Positions 3,957 to 10,159 of a stretch of 64,000 bases of DNA are shown here, one piece after another. The DNA lies in the sequence record MH221129.1. The stretch is one strand, 5' to 3'. Numbering within the stretch: position 1 is the first letter of the stretch; each line of letters starts with the position of its first letter. The notes below the pieces were generated by a model. It was given only the letters and a program-made list of their open reading frames with translations. It was not told the origin of the DNA and ran no database searches. A program made the position numbers and the translations under genes.

Positions 3957-4103
3957 TTATCTCTTGTTGAAAATGATATCACCTCCTAATCCTTTGATGC
4001 GACGAACAGTATTCTGCTTGGGGGCAGTCAACTGTTGTACACGTTGGTTGAATTGGATTCGCTTAACTTGGCTGTTAAGCAGGTGACTACGTAAGGCGTT
4101 CAT
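3957..4103 (-). CDS. Small basic hypothetical peptide (48 aa)
   Basis: ATG 4103 with GAGG upstream; MNALRSHLLNSQVKRIQFNQRVQQL... Confidence 0.4.
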   Translation of the reverse strand: MNALRSHLLNSQVKRIQFNQRVQQLTAPKQNTVRRIKGLGGDIIFNKR

Positions 4104-4130
4104 ATTGACCTCAGTGGTTAGTGTGGATAA

Positions 4131-4165
4131 GCTCTCTCCTTCGGGAGAGAGCACCTTTTTATTTT
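4131..4165 (+). terminator. Intrinsic terminator (helicase transcript)
   Basis: GCTCTCTCC-TTCG-GGAGAGAGC followed by ACCTTTTTATTTT. Confidence 0.8.
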
Positions 4166-4172
4166 CTTTGGG

Positions 4173-4211
4173 AAAATAAATAAGACTCCCTCCTACCCGA
4201 AGGTAAGAGGG
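4173..4211 (-). terminator. Intrinsic terminator of early island 1
   Basis: Minus strand CCCTCTTACC-TTCG-GGTAGGAGGG then TCTTATTTATTTT, just after the 4218 stop. Confidence 0.7.
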
Positions 4212-4217
4212 TTACTA

Positions 4218-5078
4218 TCACGGCTTATAATCAACCTTGTTGATTTTACCGCAACTGTTACAGCTAATGTTCAATTCGTAAGCATTGTTACGGAACATGC
4301 GCGGGACTTCTGATACTTGATGGTGGTCGCAGGACGAGCAAGTCCACTCAACAACTGGAGAATTTAACTTCGTTGTCTTCGGACCTTCTTCTTTCAGTAA
4401 GTCAACTATGGCGTGCAGTTTGCGGAGTTCCGCGTTAACTTGTTCTTCCCAGTCCGCATCCAGTCGCACGGTCAGCCAACGCTGAATTTTCTGACCACGG
4501 CCGTCTGGGTTCTCGTCTTCGTGAGACATTACAAACTTGAGATTAGCTCGACCCCACTGCACCACGTTCTCTATCTTAACACCGCCTACAGTGTCGCTGA
4601 TGGGCGTGTAATTAAACGTTGGGTACGTGAGGTAACATGCCTCGGCCATTGCAAAGACCGTATTGCCTTCGAACAGCGCCATCGCTTCGTCCCCGCGGGC
4701 GTCTTTCTGCGCCGCTTCTAAACGCCCACACTGGAATCCTTCAAGCGCTTGAATCTGTGTGGTCATCGCGTTGATGCCCTGGAGTATCGCAATACGCTTC
4801 TTGCTGTCGAGCACGGTTGCCATTACTTTACACAGAGCGCGCGATATCGCGCTGTACATCGAAGTGCAACGATCTTCATCGAGGAAGCGTTCTTGCTGTT
4901 CCAGATCGTAGGAAGACAGACCGTAGCTTTGTCCCTCAACCAGCACAACATACGTACGACGTTTCTCTTGGTCCATCTGGATAATAGAGGCGTCGGTAAG
5001 CTGGTCGGATGCCAATACAGAGTGACCCGTTAATAGTGGGAAGTTAACGCCTTTAATAAAGTCTTTAATGCTATACAT
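4218..5078 (-). CDS. Hypothetical protein with C-terminal zinc ribbon
   Basis: 286 aa; CSSC...CNSC at the C-terminus; SD TAAGGA. Confidence 0.75.
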   Translation of the reverse strand: MYSIKDFIKGVNFPLLTGHSVLASDQLTDASIIQMDQEKRRTYVVLVEGQSYGLSSYDLEQQERFLDEDRCTSMYSAISRALCKVMATVLDSKKRIAILQGINAMTTQIQALEGFQCGRLEAAQKDARGDEAMALFEGNTVFAMAEACYLTYPTFNYTPISDTVGGVKIENVVQWGRANLKFVMSHEDENPDGRGQKIQRWLTVRLDADWEEQVNAELRKLHAIVDLLKEEGPKTTKLNSPVVEWTCSSCDHHQVSEVPRMFRNNAYELNISCNSCGKINKVDYKP

Positions 5079-5080
5079 GA

Positions 5081-5497
5081 TTAGTCCTTAAGGGAGTTGA
5101 TAAAATCGTCCAGAGAAATATCACGGAAGGGGAAATATACACCTTCCAACGGGATGGTGATGCGCGCACTGATAGCCGCTTGCCAATCACGTACGCTGGC
5201 AGGGATATTAACAATGTCGAAATTTGGATGGTCTAACGGTGGGATAGCGTTGTATACGTAACCGTTGATGGTCTTGGACGGGAACGCGGTGCGAAACTTC
5301 GGTTCGTTGTAGAAGACTTCTTCTTTTTCCTCCTGGCCATCCCAGAAGTTATAGCCACCCTTGCCGTCAGGAATATAAACCGCTTTGTCGCGTGGCAGTG
5401 GCGTCCCTTTAGGAAGGGGTACGAATCGTGCGTACTGGTCAAGAACCATCCAGTCACTGTCGCTTTTCAGGTACTTCTGGAGCTTTTCGTTTATCAT
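5081..5497 (-). CDS. Hypothetical protein
   Basis: 138 aa, SD TAAGGA, tightly packed with neighbours. Confidence 0.7.
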   Translation of the reverse strand: MINEKLQKYLKSDSDWMVLDQYARFVPLPKGTPLPRDKAVYIPDGKGGYNFWDGQEEKEEVFYNEPKFRTAFPSKTINGYVYNAIPPLDHPNFDIVNIPASVRDWQAAISARITIPLEGVYFPFRDISLDDFINSLKD

Positions 5498-5514
5498 TGT
5501 AATAATCCTTAGGC

Positions 5515-5540
5515 AAAAAATAAAGCCACCCGAAGGTGGC
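5515..5540 (-). terminator. Intrinsic terminator within early island 1
   Basis: GCCACC-TTCG-GGTGGC-TTTATTTTTT. Confidence 0.8.
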
Positions 5541-5546
5541 GTTAAA

Positions 5547-5831
5547 TTATTTCTTCGCAGTGCGTGCGATAAGACCGCACATCACATTGCGATAGCGAGC
5601 GACTGATTTATCGGCTCGTGTTTCTTTCTTTAACGGCCAGACGTTACCGTCAAAGTCGGCGTTCATGCCTTTGATAACTTTCACAGATGAACCATCTACA
5701 AAGTCACCGCCGAGTACCAACTTACGGGGGCACAGTTCCTTCAAATCACGTTTGTTACCCAGCTCGTCAATAAAGAACCCAGTTGTACGCTCGTCTTTAT
5801 TCGGGTTCGAAAAGTGAATATCGGTTTGCAT
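5547..5831 (-). CDS. Hypothetical protein
   Basis: 94 aa, TAATG overlap with the upstream ORF. Confidence 0.65.
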   Translation of the reverse strand: MQTDIHFSNPNKDERTTGFFIDELGNKRDLKELCPRKLVLGGDFVDGSSVKVIKGMNADFDGNVWPLKKETRADKSVARYRNVMCGLIARTAKK

Positions 5832-6019
5832 TATTTTTTCCTCAGTTCACCACGGAATTTAGCCAGTTCTTCTTTCCAGTCAGGGACCGGAATAACTGAC
5901 TTCGGCCCAACGACAAGTGTACGTGCTCCGGTCTGCTTATCAATCTCAACAGATTCGTTCGCTTCTAACTCGCGAAGCACAACGCCTTTCTTGCCATCAT
6001 CACTGATAAGGATGCCCAT
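5831..6019 (-). CDS. Hypothetical protein
   Basis: 62 aa, translational-coupling overlaps on both sides. Confidence 0.6.
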   Translation of the reverse strand: MGILISDDGKKGVVLRELEANESVEIDKQTGARTLVVGPKSVIPVPDWKEELAKFRGELRKK

Positions 6020-6204
6020 TAGTAAGTCTCCTGTTGCATTGGGTAAACATTGCCCGTCGGAGAGACGAGCATCACTTGTGCGGTAACATGAATAATTTCA
6101 TCGTCGTCTTGACGATGACGTGTGCCGTTGGTCAGATTATCCCACTCGCGCTTAACACGCGGGTTGGTCAGGAATTCTGCGAAAACGTTATCAGAGAAAT
6201 CCAT
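6019..6204 (-). CDS. Hypothetical protein
   Basis: MDFSDNVFAEF..., 61 aa. ATG 6204 overlaps the TAA of the upstream small ORF. Confidence 0.6.
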   Translation of the reverse strand: MDFSDNVFAEFLTNPRVKREWDNLTNGTRHRQDDDEIIHVTAQVMLVSPTGNVYPMQQETY

Positions 6205-6347
6205 TAGCCGCGACCTGTGCACTGTGCTACGGAATTGCCGTTGTCAACGCATTTGTTGTAATCTTTGGTTACGGTGATGGACAGTACAGCGAAAGCAACA
6301 ACAGCGATGATTGCAATGATGGCGCGTTTATGATTACGAGTTAACAT
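6204..6347 (-). CDS. Small membrane protein (47 aa), absent from the ORF track
   Basis: Hand-translated MLTRNHKRAIIAIIAVVAFAVLSITVTKDYNKCVDNGNSVAQCTGRG. SD TAAGGAG, one TM helix and a Cys pair. Confidence 0.7.
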   Translation of the reverse strand: MLTRNHKRAIIAIIAVVAFAVLSITVTKDYNKCVDNGNSVAQCTGRG

Positions 6348-6386
6348 GGTAAAGCTCCTTAGGATAATGGTCGAATATGTTACAGA

Positions 6387-6821
6387 TTATTTATCAGTGT
6401 AGCGCGATTTAATAGATTTGAACTGATCGGCGATAAAATCTCGCGTCTCCTCGGAATAAAGCTTTTGAGTGTCTATACTGGACTGGAATCTTTCGATGTA
6501 TTCATCAACCATCCCATGAAGGGTAGGTGCGGTCAAAGGACGACCCGCCACTTCTTCGGAATAAAAGATTTGCATCCGCTTTTGATCTTTCTTTGCTGCC
6601 GCGAGTTGTTCTTCGGGCGTGGTCCGCGCGGACCAGTAGAACGCCCCTACACTTTCGATTTCCTCGAACGCTTTTTCACGGTACATCGCGACCGCATTTT
6701 TGAAACGTTCGATGTAGTTATCGTCTGTGAGGAACGTCGTTTCGGGTGTGTCACACAAGACCAAAATGATTTCTGGATTTTGACGAATAGATTCTTTTAC
6801 GTTGTCGGTGATAGTAATCAT
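6387..6821 (-). CDS. Hypothetical early protein
   Basis: 144 aa, SD TAAGGAG, first gene after the early promoter at 6881. Confidence 0.75.
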   Translation of the reverse strand: MITITDNVKESIRQNPEIILVLCDTPETTFLTDDNYIERFKNAVAMYREKAFEEIESVGAFYWSARTTPEEQLAAAKKDQKRMQIFYSEEVAGRPLTAPTLHGMVDEYIERFQSSIDTQKLYSEETRDFIADQFKSIKSRYTDK

Positions 6822-6871
6822 GGTAATACTCCTTAAGATAATAGTCGAATGAGTGAGAGTTGATGGTCAAC

Positions 6872-6899
6872 TCTCACCTAGGTAATATATATCTGAAAT
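6872..6899 (-). promoter_or_regulatory. Early (virion RNAP) promoter
   Basis: Minus strand ATTTCAGATATATATTACCTAGGTGAGA contains the phiKZ early consensus TATATTAC and is identical over 28 bp to 17038-17065. Confidence 0.75.
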
Positions 6900-6917
6900 A
6901 ATTTTTAATCGGGGTTT

Positions 6918-7322
6918 CTAAAAGGTTAGCAATCCGTACTTCTCGCGGTGGTATCCTAAGACTGATTGTGCGTGCGAGTAATACTCCACCAGGTCGAGAT
7001 GATTCCCCGTGGTACCGTCCCAGTCGTCGAACAGTTCATCGTGGAAGCCGATACACTTTAACGCCGGATACATCTGTTGGACTGCAGCTAACTGGTTGGC
7101 CCATTCTTGCCAAGTGTGATCACTAACCACGTTGTCGTTAAGGCGATAGTAGATGACCGAATGAATAATCATCTGGCGTCGTCTACGATGGATAAACTCC
7201 TGAATGCGTCGGGCATCAGTTACGGTACCGAGCAGAATACCCTCGTCAACTTCTGAGCTTGCGACGAAGTCGAACGGGGGGAACTTATGATTTGCCGGCT
7301 CTGCCACTTTTCTTTTCTTCAT
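6918..7322 (-). CDS. Stand-alone NAD-dependent DNA ligase domain Ia (Nlig-Ia)-like protein
   Basis: HSVIYYRLNDNVVSDHTWQEW aligns without gaps to E. coli LigA H18-L38 ([21 protein letters not shown]). No adenylation domain. Confidence 0.7.
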   Translation of the reverse strand: MKKRKVAEPANHKFPPFDFVASSEVDEGILLGTVTDARRIQEFIHRRRRQMIIHSVIYYRLNDNVVSDHTWQEWANQLAAVQQMYPALKCIGFHDELFDDWDGTTGNHLDLVEYYSHAQSVLGYHREKYGLLTF

Positions 7323-7431
7323 GCGAATAGCCTCCAGACGCTCTCAAACGCATTCTAAGCGCCTTTTGTAGTTTTACGTATCATTTATCGATTACAAGGA
7401 ATAAAACTGCTGTAAGCAGTCTAACTGCTTT

Positions 7432-7466
7432 AAAATAAAGATACCTGGCCTCACGAGGAGGCCAGG
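7432..7466 (-). terminator. Intrinsic terminator
   Basis: CCTGGCCTC-CTCGT-GAGGCCAGG then TATCTTTATTTT. Confidence 0.7.
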
Positions 7467-7472
7467 CGAGTA

Positions 7473-8270
7473 TTACATCAGATTCAGGCTTTCTGATACC
7501 GCGATTTCAGCATCACTGATACCGCTGGCAATAGACAACGTGAAACGACGGGTGCTGATAATCTCTACTGCTTCGGATGCTTTCAAAGAGAACTTATCAG
7601 CAATCGGCAGAATAGAGTTGTCGTTCAACGGGCCAAGAATCTGCGCCGGGAATGGCACGTATGAGTTAAAGGTGATGTATGGACCAACTTGCATCATCGG
7701 GAACACTTCGTTTACGTTGTTGGACATGCCTTCATCAGAAGACTGTACCGCATAACGCAGACATGCACGCATCGCGATGGTGTAGTCAGTATCGCGCGAC
7801 TCGCCGATCATAGCGAAACGGAACACGTTGAAGATGTGGTCTTCGTTTTCGAAGTGTTCAGGCAGGAAGCGCTGAACGTATTCCGGGTAAGTGGTAACAT
7901 CACCCGGTACGATATTAGCAGCGATTTTCTGTGCCAGGAAGTACGCATTCGCAAAGCCGTACTGTGCGCCAATCGCACCAGAAATCGGTGCAGTGGTCAG
8001 ACAGTGCAGGAACAGGAAGTAACCGAGGCCGCCTTTGTCTTCAATGGCAAAGTCTTTCTTGGCCTGGACACCGTCCTGAGTATAGATGACCGCCACCGTC
8101 TTATCCAGGGAGGATGCCATCACGAAGTCCAGTGACACGTTACCCGTATGCGGAAGCGTCTTCACGATACGGTCAAACAGGTTCACCGGTTTAGAGAAGT
8201 TCTCTTTTTCGTAAGCATCGATATCCAGGACAGTCTGGCCGGTCATGCGAAAGGTATGAATCGCTTTCAT
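7473..8270 (-). CDS. Hypothetical protein
   Basis: About 265 aa; ATG 8270 with AAGGA; biased codon usage. Confidence 0.75.
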   Translation of the reverse strand: MKAIHTFRMTGQTVLDIDAYEKENFSKPVNLFDRIVKTLPHTGNVSLDFVMASSLDKTVAVIYTQDGVQAKKDFAIEDKGGLGYFLFLHCLTTAPISGAIGAQYGFANAYFLAQKIAANIVPGDVTTYPEYVQRFLPEHFENEDHIFNVFRFAMIGESRDTDYTIAMRACLRYAVQSSDEGMSNNVNEVFPMMQVGPYITFNSYVPFPAQILGPLNDNSILPIADKFSLKASEAVEIISTRRFTLSIASGISDAEIAVSESLNLM

Positions 8271-8312
8271 TTGCAATAGTTCCTTAAGGTTTCTTCAGGT
8301 CATACTAGATGA

Positions 8313-9623
8313 CTATTCTGTAAATTTTTCGTCTTTCAACCACATGGTCAACTGGGACTGCGTGTTATAGCGTCCAGAAGCCATGGTCTGTCCATCAACG
8401 GCTGATTGGAATACTTCCCCAATCACTGTTCCGTAACGGGTGTAGACTCCATACTCATTCGCAAAAACGTATTTTACCGGCATACCCGGATAGATAAGTC
8501 CATGCGAAGAACGGTTCCAGGTCGTCTGCACTACTGTCCCCAACCCTTTCTCCAGTTCTGACCGTTGTGGTTTGTCGGTATCGCTGAAATGCTGATTAGG
8601 ATCGATGGGTGCGTTGACTACCCCGCCAGGATACGCCGCAGGGTTAGCCTGTGCGACGAATTTATCTGGAGTGGTCATACTGGTATCGCCTGGCGTAAAC
8701 GAGCTGCTACGACCGTCCAGGACGCGTACAGAGCCTACACGATAACCAGTACCTTTGTTCAGGGCATTCTGGTCACGGTTCTCCAAACTGTTAGTGTCGC
8801 CGCCACAAATCAAGTACAGCACGTTGCCAGCCAAATGGGCAGTACGGTCTAGGTGGGCAGCTTGTTCGCGGGGAAGGTTGTAAATAACCAACTTACGAAC
8901 GGTACTGGAGAACTTCTGTGAGTTCCACGGCTGGAACAGATACCAACGTTGCAGGTATTGGAAGATGCCTAATCCTTTGCTGTACACACCGTAGTGCTTC
9001 TGCAAATAATCGAACACCCCTAAGAAGTCCATCGAATCCGGTATCACGACATCGCGATAGGCTTGTTGTTCTTCCTCGTCGTACTCAACTCCTTTTAGTT
9101 GCCCTTCCCCTGCACTGCCTGTCGGTAACGTATCTGCCAGGATTGCCCGCGCAATAGTTAACCCGTCCGTCTCATGATAAATCCCACCAACCTGACGCAT
9201 TCGCAAGAACCACATCGATTCATCCATAAGCTCCAATGTCACCAGCGCAATCGACTTGTCGTTCGACTGGGACAGGAACATAGTGGGCGATTCGGCATCG
9301 TGGTCGCGGTTGTTTATCACGATTCCCCGGTAATTAAACACTCCTGCAATCTTTGTTCCCTGACGTAATAGCAGCTTCACTTTCAGGTCACCTTCTGCGC
9401 TTGAAGTTATCATGCGCATTTGGCTAAACGGTACTGCCAACGTTAGATGCGTAATCAGGCACATGTCCCGAACGAAATGCCCGGTGTGGATGATAGACAA
9501 CATCTTCAACACGGTAACCGGTGCATTACGCACCGTCAAGAATACACCGTAGTCGATAGCCGGTAACCCAGCCGCATTAGCGATATGGCTGTTCGCCATC
9601 TGTTGTAACCGACCGAACGACAT
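8313..9623 (-). CDS. Virion tail/baseplate protein (SPN3US gp64 / phiKZ gp101 position)
   Basis: 436 aa, last gene of a late operon; assignment by synteny. Confidence 0.6.
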   Translation of the reverse strand: MSFGRLQQMANSHIANAAGLPAIDYGVFLTVRNAPVTVLKMLSIIHTGHFVRDMCLITHLTLAVPFSQMRMITSSAEGDLKVKLLLRQGTKIAGVFNYRGIVINNRDHDAESPTMFLSQSNDKSIALVTLELMDESMWFLRMRQVGGIYHETDGLTIARAILADTLPTGSAGEGQLKGVEYDEEEQQAYRDVVIPDSMDFLGVFDYLQKHYGVYSKGLGIFQYLQRWYLFQPWNSQKFSSTVRKLVIYNLPREQAAHLDRTAHLAGNVLYLICGGDTNSLENRDQNALNKGTGYRVGSVRVLDGRSSSFTPGDTSMTTPDKFVAQANPAAYPGGVVNAPIDPNQHFSDTDKPQRSELEKGLGTVVQTTWNRSSHGLIYPGMPVKYVFANEYGVYTRYGTVIGEVFQSAVDGQTMASGRYNTQSQLTMWLKDEKFTE

Positions 9624-10159
9624 CAGCGACCCCCTCGTAACCGATAAGCGTATTCAATACGTTTCATAATCGTGTCGTTAAATCTGTGCTGCTGTGTTTC
9701 TAAGCGCACTTGACCGAATAATGACTGTAACGCCACGCCCATGGTAATCTCTGGCTTTTTGAAGTAGCCGTAACGGTTTGCAACCGGAAACAGCTTCGAA
9801 GCCAGTACGTTAAATTGGCGTAGCCCCTCAATAGGCACCTGTCGTTCAATCAGCTGCGGTGTTTCGAGATACTTCAGCCAATCAGCAAGGTGTTCCATAA
9901 TCCACCCGTAAACCTTAATCCCGTCATGCGGGTCGTTCACGTCTAAGGCACCCCCCGTCGCCAAATACTCGGCAGCATCAGAGGGGTGCAGGTAGATAGG
10001 TTTCATGTTCAACAGAAGCGCGTTCCGTTTCTTAGGATCTTCGGGCAAGAAAAGACCATACTCTTCCCGAGCGTATTGAGTGATGGTTGCATACTCCGGT
10101 ACCCGGAAGAAAACCCACCCTTTAAACAGCATAAATGCTGCACTGTGCTTCCGTGACAT
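9623..10159 (-). CDS. Conserved hypothetical protein (late operon)
   Basis: 178 aa, coupled to its neighbours. Confidence 0.7.
   Translation of the reverse strand: MSRKHSAAFMLFKGWVFFRVPEYATITQYAREEYGLFLPEDPKKRNALLLNMKPIYLHPSDAAEYLATGGALDVNDPHDGIKVYGWIMEHLADWLKYLETPQLIERQVPIEGLRQFNVLASKLFPVANRYGYFKKPEITMGVALQSLFGQVRLETQQHRFNDTIMKRIEYAYRLRGGR

What the first reader, a model, noticed from the sequence alone, without database searches (positions are those of the whole stretch)
6918..7322. Stand-alone NAD+-ligase Ia (NMN-binding) domain
Seen: an ungapped match to E. coli LigA residues 18-38 retaining H18, Y22, aromatic 23, D32 and aromatic 35 (D36 is Q here). The protein is 134 aa with no adenylation domain. 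Knowledge: domain Ia binds the NMN moiety of NAD+, and solo Nlig-Ia domains have been noted in phage NAD-conflict contexts. Inference: it may be an NAD/ADPR-signal sensor or sponge against Thoeris/Sir2/TIR-type defence, or a dominant-negative modulator of host LigA.
Basis: partly seen in the sequence, partly recalled or inferred. Interest (0 to 1): 0.65.

Follow-up and report, generated by a model that had tools for sequence, protein, structure and literature searches.

The report
Stand-alone ligase NAD-binding domain in phage
A Salmonella jumbo phage carries a small gene that is only the NAD+-recognising front piece of a bacterial DNA ligase with no ligase attached; this kind of phage protein was described in 2022, its function is still untested, and it is wrongly labelled 'DNA ligase' in the databases.

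Summary
Window 6918-7322 (-) is a real 134-aa gene with a good ribosome-binding site. It matches Pfam PF22745 (Nlig-Ia) end to end (E 7e-27). Its AlphaFold model (pLDDT 90.5) superposes on domain Ia of solved LigA structures.

The window is Salmonella phage SPAsTU/STsAS (Seoulvirus, Chimalliviridae). The gene is annotated there as 'putative DNA ligase', which is wrong: the 250-kb genome holds no ligase catalytic, OB, Zn, HhH or BRCT module.

The class is already published. Iyer et al. 2022 (PMC9503650) found solo Nlig-Ia proteins in 81 phages and proposed an NAD+ sensor or shield.

New here:
- All 80 metagenomic relatives I fetched are solo proteins of 91-149 aa.
- None of 40 phage records that carry the gene has any DNA ligase.
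- Outside the jumbo phages, the gene usually lies in the replication/dNTP module (RNase H, clamp loader, RNR, gp32, DNA polymerase).
- The close relative SPN3US lacks the gene, so it is accessory.

I read it as an NMN/NAD+-binding accessory protein tied to the phage's dependence on host LigA. The sensor/shield idea is the main rival. No binding test could be run. This is a known kind with unknown function, of modest interest.

The parts
6918..7322 (-). CDS of the 134-aa stand-alone Nlig-Ia protein (stop codon included); GenBank AXF51090.1, annotated 'putative DNA ligase'
   Evidence: ORF list and translation; Pfam PF22745 E 7.4e-27; PHROG 6466; 100% identical to SPAsTU and STsAS
7011..7211 (-). 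Residues 38-104: the domain-Ia-like helical core that superposes on LigA residues about 2-61
   Evidence: AF2 model pLDDT 90.5. Foldseek top ~20 hits are all LigA, about 50 aa, rmsd about 1 A, prob 0.99. VIA-align: 3jsl_A Z 6.5 and 4glx_A Z 5.4, ranks 1 and 2 of 48,161 chains
7107..7163 (-). Codons of the predicted NMN pocket: H54, Y58, Y59, D68, W71, Q72 (= LigA H18, Y22, H23, D32, Y35, D36)
   Evidence: hhalign register. Among 75 unique family members Y58, Y59 and D68 are invariant, H54 is 74/75, position 71 is always aromatic, and Q72 is Q in 64, S in 5, D in 4
7005..7022 (-). Family-specific W-D-G-T-T-G motif (residues 101-106). It falls about where LigA has its D-S-P-T-Q segment
   Evidence: Invariant or near-invariant in alignments A1 and in the 75-member set; the structural alignment reaches model residue 102-104 = LigA 60-61
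7173..7190 (-). Arg-rich stretch H-R-R-R-R-Q (residues 45-50) on the first long helix; conserved in the solo family, not in LigA
   Evidence: R48 invariant, R47 72/75, Q50 73/75; LigA has T-E-L-R-T-T at the aligned positions
7212..7322 (-). N-terminal extension (residues 1-37) with an H-x-[FL]-P-[PA]-F-x-F motif. It is seen in the nine closest homologues (two named jumbo phages of Erwinia and Salmonella, the rest unnamed metagenomic) and is modelled with high confidence
   Evidence: Alignment A1/A2; pLDDT 91-96 for residues 11-40; the shorter relatives P0010-P0016 of 90-116 aa lack this motif, and the metagenomic relatives have a median length of 109 aa
7331..7335 (-). Shine-Dalgarno GGAGG, 8 nt upstream of the ATG
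   Evidence: Read directly from the sequence
7433..7467 (-). Intrinsic-terminator-like hairpin (10 bp, 7 GC) with a U-rich tail. It ends the upstream gene's transcript, so the Nlig-Ia gene probably has its own promoter in 7323-7403
   Evidence: Terminator scan; RNA fold of the 78-nt stretch 7395-7472, which holds this hairpin and the second one at 7404-7422: -30.5 kcal/mol, z -4.9
6852..6878 (-). Perfect 12-bp hairpin 40 nt after the stop codon, without a U tail; possibly a terminator or an RNA-stability element
   Evidence: RNA fold -19.9 kcal/mol, z -5.0, 0 of 200 shuffles as stable

Best explanation
Shown: the gene encodes a small all-helical protein. Its core is homologous to domain Ia, the module that grips the nicotinamide-mononucleotide (NMN) half of NAD+ in bacterial NAD+-dependent DNA ligase (LigA). 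It has no nucleotidyltransferase, OB, Zn-finger, HhH or BRCT part, and the phage has none elsewhere, so it cannot ligate DNA. The stacking and acidic pocket residues are under strong purifying selection across the phage-only family.

Inferred, strongly: it binds NAD+ or NMN through that pocket. The family-specific Arg-rich helix and the WDG(S/T)TG loop probably complete the binding site or form a docking surface.

Inferred, weakly (about 0.4): its role is tied to the phage's dependence on the host's LigA. The family occurs only in phages that bring their own replisome but no DNA ligase, and in most lineages the gene lies inside the replication/dNTP module. I therefore propose that it acts as a trans-acting Ia. 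It would either present NAD+ to LigA's adenylation domain or capture the NMN product, which can reverse LigA adenylation. Either way, phage Okazaki nicks would keep being sealed when NAD+ is scarce, for example after NADase-type defences fire.

It is an accessory gene, not an essential one: the close relative SPN3US lacks it.
For: Identity:
- Pfam Nlig-Ia E 7.4e-27.
- The model ranks LigA first in two independent fold searches.
- hhalign register to E. coli LigA.
- TIGR00575 hits only this ORF in the phage.

Pocket conservation: Y58, Y59 and D68 are invariant, H54 is 74/75, and position 71 is always aromatic in 75 unique members. E. faecalis LigA also has Y-Y at positions 22/23, so H23Y is natural variation. 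Nicotinamide stacks on a tyrosine pair in LigA (PMC7470946).

Solo state: all 80 IMG/VR relatives are ORFs of 91-149 aa.

Ligase-less carriers: I found no PF01653 or PF01068 in any of these.
- SPAsTU.
- Five unrelated GenBank phages.
- Three Erwinia jumbo phages.
- 30 IMG/VR records, ten of them at least 90% complete.
This agrees with 80 of 81 in PMC9503650.

Replication context:
- phiEco32, Arthrobacter Cassia, Clostridium phiCTP1, Rhodococcus RGL3 and Erwinia Phobos.
- The most recurrent IMG/VR neighbours are clamp loader, T4 RNase H/FEN, RNR, gp32, PhoH and MazG-like.
- 20 of 37 sequence groups have at least one such neighbour within 6 kb.

Accessory status: SPN3US has a 243-bp gap at the syntenic slot.
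Against: - There are no binding or activity data for any family member.
- In this phage the neighbours are all of unknown function, and the gene lies between virion genes and a helicase, so the replication context is borrowed from other lineages.
- SPN3US is also ligase-less and manages without the gene.
- LigA's own tethered Ia should outcompete a free one, and LigA already has a low Km for NAD+ (from my own knowledge).
- Position D36, essential in LigA, is Q in 85% of the family.
- The exclusion from ligase-encoding phages was not tested against a matched background, and the lineages are not all independent.
Confidence: 0.4

Rival explanations
1. NAD+ sensor or shield against NAD+-depleting defence (the published proposal of Iyer et al. 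2022). The solo domain binds NAD+ and either reports its fall to another phage protein or protects a pool of it from host NADase effectors, with no involvement of LigA.
For: - Proposed in PMC9503650 section 3.5.1.
- The pocket residues are conserved.
- The gene is accessory and patchily distributed, and in this phage it is a separate transcription unit flanked by hairpins, as is usual for conflict genes.
- LigA-derived NAD+ biosensors show that this kind of module can report NAD+ (PDB 8jyd title).
Against: - A solo protein of 91-149 aa has no output domain, and no conserved partner gene was found. The 144-aa neighbour is unique to SPAsTU/STsAS, and neighbours differ between lineages.
- Shielding a millimolar metabolite one-to-one with a protein is stoichiometrically implausible.
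- This reading does not explain why the gene is absent from phages with their own ligase, including ATP-dependent ones, nor why it sits in replication modules.
- SPAsTU has no other NAD-rebuilding genes.
Confidence: 0.3
2. Dominant-negative inhibitor of host LigA. The free Ia mimic occupies the Ia docking site on LigA's adenylation domain and blocks adenylation, which shuts down host replication and repair.
For: It is homologous to the very domain that closes over the LigA active site. Its extra conserved surfaces (the Arg-rich helix, the WDG(S/T)TG loop and the N-terminal extension) could give tighter docking than the native Ia.
Against: All carrier phages I tested lack any DNA ligase and have replisomes that make Okazaki fragments (RNase H, clamp loader and primase/helicase neighbours), so they need LigA active. 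The strict conservation of the nicotinamide-contact residues would not be needed for a simple plug.
Confidence: 0.1
3. Reader of another nicotinamide-bearing ligand, for example the 5' NAD cap of RNA. The pocket would hold the nicotinamide nucleotide and the Arg-rich helix the nucleic-acid backbone.
For: An invariant basic run (R47, R48, with R/Q/K around them) lies on the same helix as the pocket and has no counterpart in LigA. Apart from that, this is speculation.
Against: No RNA-related neighbours recur. No nucleic-acid-binding fold was detected. The arginines could equally bind the NAD+ pyrophosphate.
Confidence: 0.05
4. Sponge for ADPR-derived immune signals (gcADPR, His-ADPR and similar), in the manner of Tad1/Tad2.
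For: It is a small, abundant-type phage protein related to an NAD-binding module.
Against: The conserved residues are those that contact the nicotinamide riboside moiety, which these signals have lost. It shows no sequence or fold similarity to known sponges. Its replication-module context is not typical of anti-Thoeris genes.
Confidence: 0.04
5. A true DNA ligase, or one subunit of a split NAD+ ligase as in phage T5 (the GenBank annotation is 'putative DNA ligase').
For: Database labels.
Against: The protein is only 134 aa. No PF01653, PF01068, PF09414 or any non-Ia part of TIGR00575 occurs anywhere in the 250-kb genome.
Confidence: 0.01

Closest known systems
Solo Nlig-Ia proteins of phages (Pfam PF22745, PHROG 6466; Iyer, Burroughs, Anantharaman and Aravind 2022, e.g. 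ECBP2_0056, phiEco32 gp62)
   Same: Full-length match to the family model. It is a stand-alone small protein with the NMN-contact residues conserved, and the phage has no ligase catalytic module.
   Different: It belongs to the jumbo-phage branch (Seoulvirus and Machinavirus of Chimalliviridae hosts Salmonella and Erwinia). This branch has an extra structured N-terminal extension of about 37 aa. Here the gene lies between virion genes and a helicase, not in a dNTP/replication module.
Domain Ia of bacterial NAD+-dependent DNA ligase LigA (E. coli 2OWO/5TT5/4GLX, E. faecalis 1TAE, S. aureus 3JSL)
   Same: The helical hairpin fold superposes (rmsd 1-2 A over 50-58 residues). The counterparts of H18, Y22, D32 and P50 are the same residues, and Y35 is aromatic W.
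   Different: It is not fused to any catalytic domain. D36 is Q. There is a 9-residue longer loop before a WDG(S/T)TG motif that replaces DSPTQ. It also has an Arg-rich first helix and added N- and C-terminal elements, and sequence identity is only 14-24%.
Two-subunit (split) NAD+ ligase of phage T5 and relatives
   Same: A ligase-derived piece encoded as a separate phage gene.
   Different: In T5-type ligases both halves exist and together make a complete enzyme. Here no second half exists in the genome.
Phage counter-measures to NAD+-depleting immunity (the NARP1/NARP2 NAD+ rebuilding pathways; the Tad1/Tad2 signal sponges)
   Same: A possible shared purpose: keeping NAD+-dependent processes running during infection. 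This is my inference from general knowledge of these systems.
   Different: There is no enzyme domain and no similarity to those proteins. SPAsTU lacks NAPRTase/NAMPT and Nudix genes, and the pocket is specific for the nicotinamide side of the molecule.

Membership tests
Pfam PF22745 Nlig-Ia / solo phage Nlig-Ia class (Iyer et al. 2022) | Significant, full-length match to the family profile | tested here: met
   E 7.4e-27, 94.3 bits against a cut-off of 27, profile 2-91 of 92; PHROG 6466 E 7.4e-27
Pfam PF22745 Nlig-Ia / solo phage Nlig-Ia class (Iyer et al. 2022) | Helical fold superposable on LigA domain Ia | tested here: met
   AF2 pLDDT 90.5. LigA chains fill the top of the Foldseek list and take ranks 1-2 of 48,161 in VIA-align, Z 6.5 and 5.4. 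The scores are modest because the domain is small
Pfam PF22745 Nlig-Ia / solo phage Nlig-Ia class (Iyer et al. 2022) | Conservation of the NMN-contact residues (LigA Y22, H23, D32, Y35, D36) | tested here: met
   Y58, Y59 (Y also in E. faecalis LigA), D68 and W71 are kept. D36 is Q, which is the family norm (64 of 75)
Pfam PF22745 Nlig-Ia / solo phage Nlig-Ia class (Iyer et al. 2022) | Stand-alone protein in a phage that lacks NAD+- and ATP-dependent ligase catalytic modules | tested here: met
   The protein is 134 aa with no other domain. PF01653, PF01068 and PF09414 are absent from the whole record, and TIGR00575 hits only this ORF
Pfam PF22745 Nlig-Ia / solo phage Nlig-Ia class (Iyer et al. 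2022) | Actual binding of NAD+ or NMN | not testable with these tools
   No ligand-docking or binding tool was available, and no experimental report is in the held library
NAD+-dependent DNA ligase (LigA), the GenBank label | Nucleotidyltransferase domain with the KxDG active-site lysine | tested here: not met
   No PF01653 match in the protein or in the 250-kb genome
NAD+-dependent DNA ligase (LigA), the GenBank label | OB fold, Zn finger, HhH and BRCT DNA-binding modules | tested here: not met
   The full-length LigA model TIGR00575 matches only its positions 5-45
Split two-subunit NAD+ ligase (T5 type) | A second gene that supplies the catalytic remainder of the ligase | tested here: not met
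   None in the genome
Protein that binds host LigA (trans-acting Ia or inhibitor) | Predicted or measured complex with the LigA adenylation domain | not tested

The most novel reading that the evidence does not exclude
The solo Ia is a trans-acting cofactor-handling subunit for the host's essential LigA. It would load NAD+ onto LigA's adenylation domain, or strip the inhibitory NMN product from it. Phages without a ligase of their own, including a nucleus-forming jumbo phage, could then keep sealing Okazaki nicks when NAD+ collapses. That would be a counter-defence that works by protecting one NAD+-consuming host enzyme, not by rebuilding NAD+ or sponging signals.
Probability: 0.2. Interest if true: 0.7.

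Novelty: new member of a known kind. Interest (0 to 1): 0.3.

Why it matters
NAD+ depletion is one of the commonest ways bacteria abort phage infection. The known phage answers are NAD+ rebuilding pathways and signal sponges. A phage-only family found in hundreds of genomes, which keeps just the nicotinamide-recognising piece of the one essential NAD+-consuming replication enzyme, is a good candidate for a third kind of answer, or for a new way of using a host enzyme. No member has been studied at the bench.

Two things are useful from this window in particular:
- The record label should be corrected. The gene is not a DNA ligase, and neither are dozens of relatives labelled that way.
- Two testable regularities constrain the function: strict absence from ligase-encoding phages, and residence in replication modules.

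As a finding it is not new. The class and its Pfam family already exist.

Tried and rejected
- **Complex prediction.** There is no verdict on LigA binding.
- **Single-sequence PDB search.** It gave only noise: macrolide phosphotransferase and Fic proteins at E 0.65-1.4. The family profile was needed to reach LigA.
- **RxLR effector hits.** The family profile's best PDB hits by E-value were Phytophthora RxLR effector repeats (7e-5), through a short D..W..W..L...YP-like helical motif repeated four times. I reject this as motif-level or chance similarity.
- **Neighbours in the window.** Pfam gave nothing for nine flanking ORFs, and PHROGs gave only 'unknown function' families.
- **A two-gene module with the 144-aa downstream ORF.** Rejected, because that ORF occurs only in SPAsTU and STsAS.
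- **Own-genome search.** No genome is held for the window. I reached the record through locus handles instead.
- **First ORF finder.** My motif-based finder was too strict and I replaced it with an HMM search.
- **Cellular genomes.** The scan with alignment A1 failed for lack of a conserved stretch. The narrower A2 scan found one 'Marinovum MAG' contig, which turned out to be phage DNA. This says little about cellular absence, because the search patterns were narrow.
- **Paper supplements.** None are held for PMC9503650, so I could not check whether this phage is among the paper's 81.

Full report
**What is there**

Window 6918-7322 on the minus strand is an open reading frame of 134 codons. 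A GGAGG ribosome-binding site lies 8 nt before its ATG.

The upstream gene (7473-8276) is followed by a strong terminator-like hairpin with a U-rich tail at 7433-7467, and by a second hairpin at 7404-7422. A perfect 12-bp hairpin follows the stop codon at 6852-6878 (z -5.0). The gene therefore looks like a separate transcription unit.

The window is 100% identical to Salmonella phages SPAsTU (250.7 kb) and STsAS. These are unclassified Seoulvirus, family Chimalliviridae, the nucleus-forming jumbo phages. In SPAsTU the gene is annotated 'putative DNA ligase' (AXF51090.1).

**Checking the observation**

- The protein matches Pfam PF22745, 'Nlig-Ia, DNA ligase-like N-terminal NAD+-binding domain', over the whole profile. 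E is 7.4e-27, residues 40-127 against profile positions 2-91 of 92. It also matches PHROG 6466.
- The same Pfam model scores genuine LigA proteins above its cut-off in 8 of the control genomes. So the family link to ligase domain Ia does not rest on the phage proteins alone.
- A profile of 16 family members aligns without gaps to E. coli LigA residues 8-54 (hhalign). I checked the LigA numbering by translating ligA of MG1655.
- The family profile also finds more than twenty LigA entries in the PDB. They are weak individually (E 0.005-1), all in the same register, and all at the ligase N-terminus.
- E. faecalis LigA itself has Y-Y at positions 22/23. The only real departure from the LigA pocket is therefore D36 to Q.

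**Structure**

AlphaFold2 on the 16-sequence alignment gave a confident model: mean pLDDT 90.5, pTM 0.85, with helices at 23-31, 37-59, 68-84, 95-98 and 112-128.

- In Foldseek against the PDB, 19 of the top 20 listed hits are NAD+-dependent ligases (1TA8, 4LH7, 1TAE, 5TT5, 1DGS and others). About 50 residues align at about 1 A rmsd with probability 0.99. The E-values are only about 0.4 because the aligned piece is short.
- An independent all-against-representatives search ranked S. aureus LigA (Z 6.5, model 38-102 on chain 2-60) and E. coli LigA (Z 5.4, model 39-104 on chain 3-61) first and second of 48,161 chains.

Residues 38-104 are thus a domain-Ia fold. Residues 1-37 and 105-134 are additions with no recognised counterpart.

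**Not a ligase**

The whole 250,739-bp SPAsTU record has none of the following:
- an NAD+-ligase adenylation domain (PF01653);
- an ATP-dependent ligase domain (PF01068);
- an Rnl2-type RNA ligase domain (PF09414).

The full-length LigA model TIGR00575 hits the genome once, at this ORF, with model positions 5-45 only. The database label is therefore wrong, and a T5-style split ligase is excluded.

**What is already known**

A full-text search found one paper that names this: Iyer, Burroughs, Anantharaman and Aravind, Viruses 2022 (PMC9503650). They report the following:
- The Nlig-Ia domain exists as a solo protein in 81 phages, for example ECBP2_0056.
- With one exception, these phages have no ligase catalytic module.
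- The ligand-binding residues are conserved.
- They propose a role as an NAD+ sensor or shield against host NADase effectors.

I found no experimental work. The class is therefore known, and this protein is a further member of it.

**Family survey done here**

- tblastn found the gene in 200 GenBank phage records: 88 Escherichia (the listed ones are about 75-80 kb phiEco32-like phages; phiEco32 itself is a Kuravirus), 60 Arthrobacter, 15 Erwinia (mostly jumbo), 15 Clostridium, 8 Rhodococcus and 3 Salmonella. Many are mislabelled 'DNA ligase'.
- IMG/VR holds at least 260 viral contigs with a relative. In all 80 loci I fetched, the gene is a stand-alone ORF of 91-149 aa, median 109.
- Conservation over 75 unique sequences:

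| Position | Conservation |
|---|---|
| R48, Y58, Y59, D68, A75, L78, G106, L109 | invariant |
| H54, S55, W74, Q82, F98 | 74 of 75 |
| 71 | always aromatic (71 W, 4 F) |
| 72 | Q in 64, S in 5, D in 4 |

- Two conserved features have no counterpart in LigA. One is an Arg-rich stretch (R-R-R-R-Q) on the first long helix. The other is a W-D-G-(S/T)-T-G loop, which falls about where LigA has D-S-P-T-Q.
- A narrow scan of 185,579 prokaryotic species genomes found one hit, a 'Marinovum MAG' contig. Its neighbouring genes are 91-100% identical to those of viral contigs, so it is phage DNA.

**Ligase-less carriers**

No PF01653 or PF01068 was found in any carrier record I tested:
- five unrelated GenBank carriers: phiEco32, Arthrobacter Cassia, Clostridium phiCTP1, Rhodococcus RGL3 and Erwinia Phobos;
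- three Erwinia jumbo phages;
- 30 IMG/VR records, ten of them at least 90% complete.

This reproduces the published exclusion on independent data.

**Context**

In this phage the flanking ORFs have no Pfam match and fall only in PHROGs of unknown function. The gene lies between virion structural genes and a helicase. The same slot is kept in Erwinia phages pEa_SNUABM_29, _4 and _43.

SPN3US, the type Seoulvirus, has only a 243-bp gap there. It is also ligase-less. The gene is therefore accessory.

In other lineages the picture is consistent:

| Phage | Position of the gene |
|---|---|
| phiEco32 | between thymidylate synthase and PhoH, near the DNA polymerase |
| Arthrobacter Cassia | two genes after DNA polymerase I |
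| Clostridium phiCTP1 | between Pol III beta and Pol III alpha |
| Rhodococcus RGL3 | between DNA polymerase I and dCMP deaminase |
| Erwinia Phobos | between thymidylate kinase and thymidylate synthase |

I also clustered all neighbours within 6 kb in the 80 IMG/VR loci, without prior assumptions. The loci fall into 37 groups at 80% identity. The most recurrent neighbour families were:
- clamp-loader gp44 and gp62;
- T4 RNase H / 5'-3' exonuclease;
- ribonucleotide reductase, both subunits;
- PhoH;
- gp32 single-strand-binding protein;
- a MazG-like pyrophosphohydrolase;
- a PD-(D/E)XK nuclease;
- SegE;
- DUF6433.

Twenty of the 37 groups have at least one replication or nucleotide-metabolism neighbour. 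This is a lower bound, because I annotated only the recurrent clusters.

SPAsTU itself shows no NAD-conflict setting. It has no NAPRTase/NAMPT and no Nudix. It has one sub-threshold Macro-like ORF about 135 kb away.

**How it most likely works**

Shown: it is a stand-alone, non-catalytic homologue of the NMN-binding domain of LigA, with the pocket under strong selection.

Inferred with good support: it binds NAD+ or NMN through that pocket. In LigA the nicotinamide stacks on the tyrosine pair (PMC7470946). That the five Ia residues are essential is from my knowledge of Sriskanda and Shuman 2002, which is cited.

Inferred weakly: its role. Two regularities point to a link with host LigA and away from a general NAD+ sensor. 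The gene is strictly absent from phages with any ligase, including ATP-dependent ones. It also sits inside replication modules next to the enzymes that create the nicks.

I therefore favour a trans-acting Ia, at about 0.4. It would either present NAD+ to LigA's adenylation domain or capture the NMN product, which can reverse adenylation. Either would help ligase-less phages when NAD+ is low.

Against this reading:
- LigA's own tethered Ia should win over a free one.
- SPN3US does without the gene.
- D36 is replaced.
- I could not run the complex prediction.

The published sensor/shield idea remains a serious rival (about 0.3). An inhibitor of LigA (about 0.1) fits poorly with ligase-less carriers. 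A sponge for ADPR-derived signals is unlikely, because the conserved pocket is the nicotinamide one.

**Verdict**

The domain call is right, the functional guesses are only partly supported, and the class is already described. It is a new member of a known kind, with a jumbo-phage-specific N-terminal extension. Interest is modest (0.3). The value lies in the unanswered function and in the two constraints added here.

**Earlier scan notes**

Notes returned by the findings search concerned other phages (dead or split NAD-ligase homologues). They only prompted the split-ligase check, which was negative here.

Noticed in passing
window 6387-6821 (-): The 144-aa ORF immediately downstream of the Nlig-Ia gene is found by tblastn only in SPAsTU and STsAS among 50,697 phage records. 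It has only a weak PHROG 8484 match (E 7e-10) and no Pfam match. It is a lineage-specific orphan inserted at the same variable slot.
   Followed up: partly
window 5547-5831 (-): This 94-aa ORF has no counterpart at the syntenic position in SPN3US. It matches only the C-terminal half (positions 110-187 of 187) of PHROG 26593, so it may be a truncated or split gene.
   Followed up: no
MH221129.1 204656-204940 (-), outside the window: A 166-aa ORF has a sub-threshold Macro-domain match (PF01661, E 1.3e-4, 19.8 bits against a cut-off of 22). It is the only other hint of an NAD/ADP-ribose-related gene in this phage.
   Followed up: no
window 4000-10000 compared with L009 (SPN3US), L010, L011 and L012: The stretch between the helicase and the virion structural genes is a variable region in Seoulvirus and Machinavirus phages. 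Small genes come and go here (three are absent from SPN3US), while the flanking genes keep about 75% DNA identity.
   Followed up: partly
L093 (NZGN01000038.1, 'MAG: Marinovum sp.', 113 kb): This contig, binned as a bacterial MAG, carries a solo Nlig-Ia gene. Its neighbours are 91-100% identical to those of IMG/VR viral contigs L062, L066 and L075. It is very probably a phage genome mis-binned into the MAG.
   Followed up: partly
alignment A1 against PDB 9rdc_A / 9ria_G: The family profile hits four tandem repeats of the Phytophthora RxLR effector PITG_16705 (E 7e-5) through a D..W..W..L...YP helical motif. I take this as motif-level coincidence, but it scored better than any LigA chain.
   Followed up: no
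GenBank phage records listed: Many solo Nlig-Ia genes of 90-130 aa are annotated 'DNA ligase' or 'NAD-dependent DNA ligase' (phiEco32, SU10, many Arthrobacter and Rhodococcus phages). In STsAS the ORF is not annotated at all. This is a systematic mis-annotation.
   Followed up: partly
IMG/VR loci L053, L057, L026, L039, L086 and others: A DUF6433 protein of about 147 aa recurs within about 1 kb of the solo Nlig-Ia gene in 7 of the 37 sequence groups, together with T4-type RNase H. I did not test whether DUF6433 is linked to Nlig-Ia itself or is merely syntenic.
   Followed up: no
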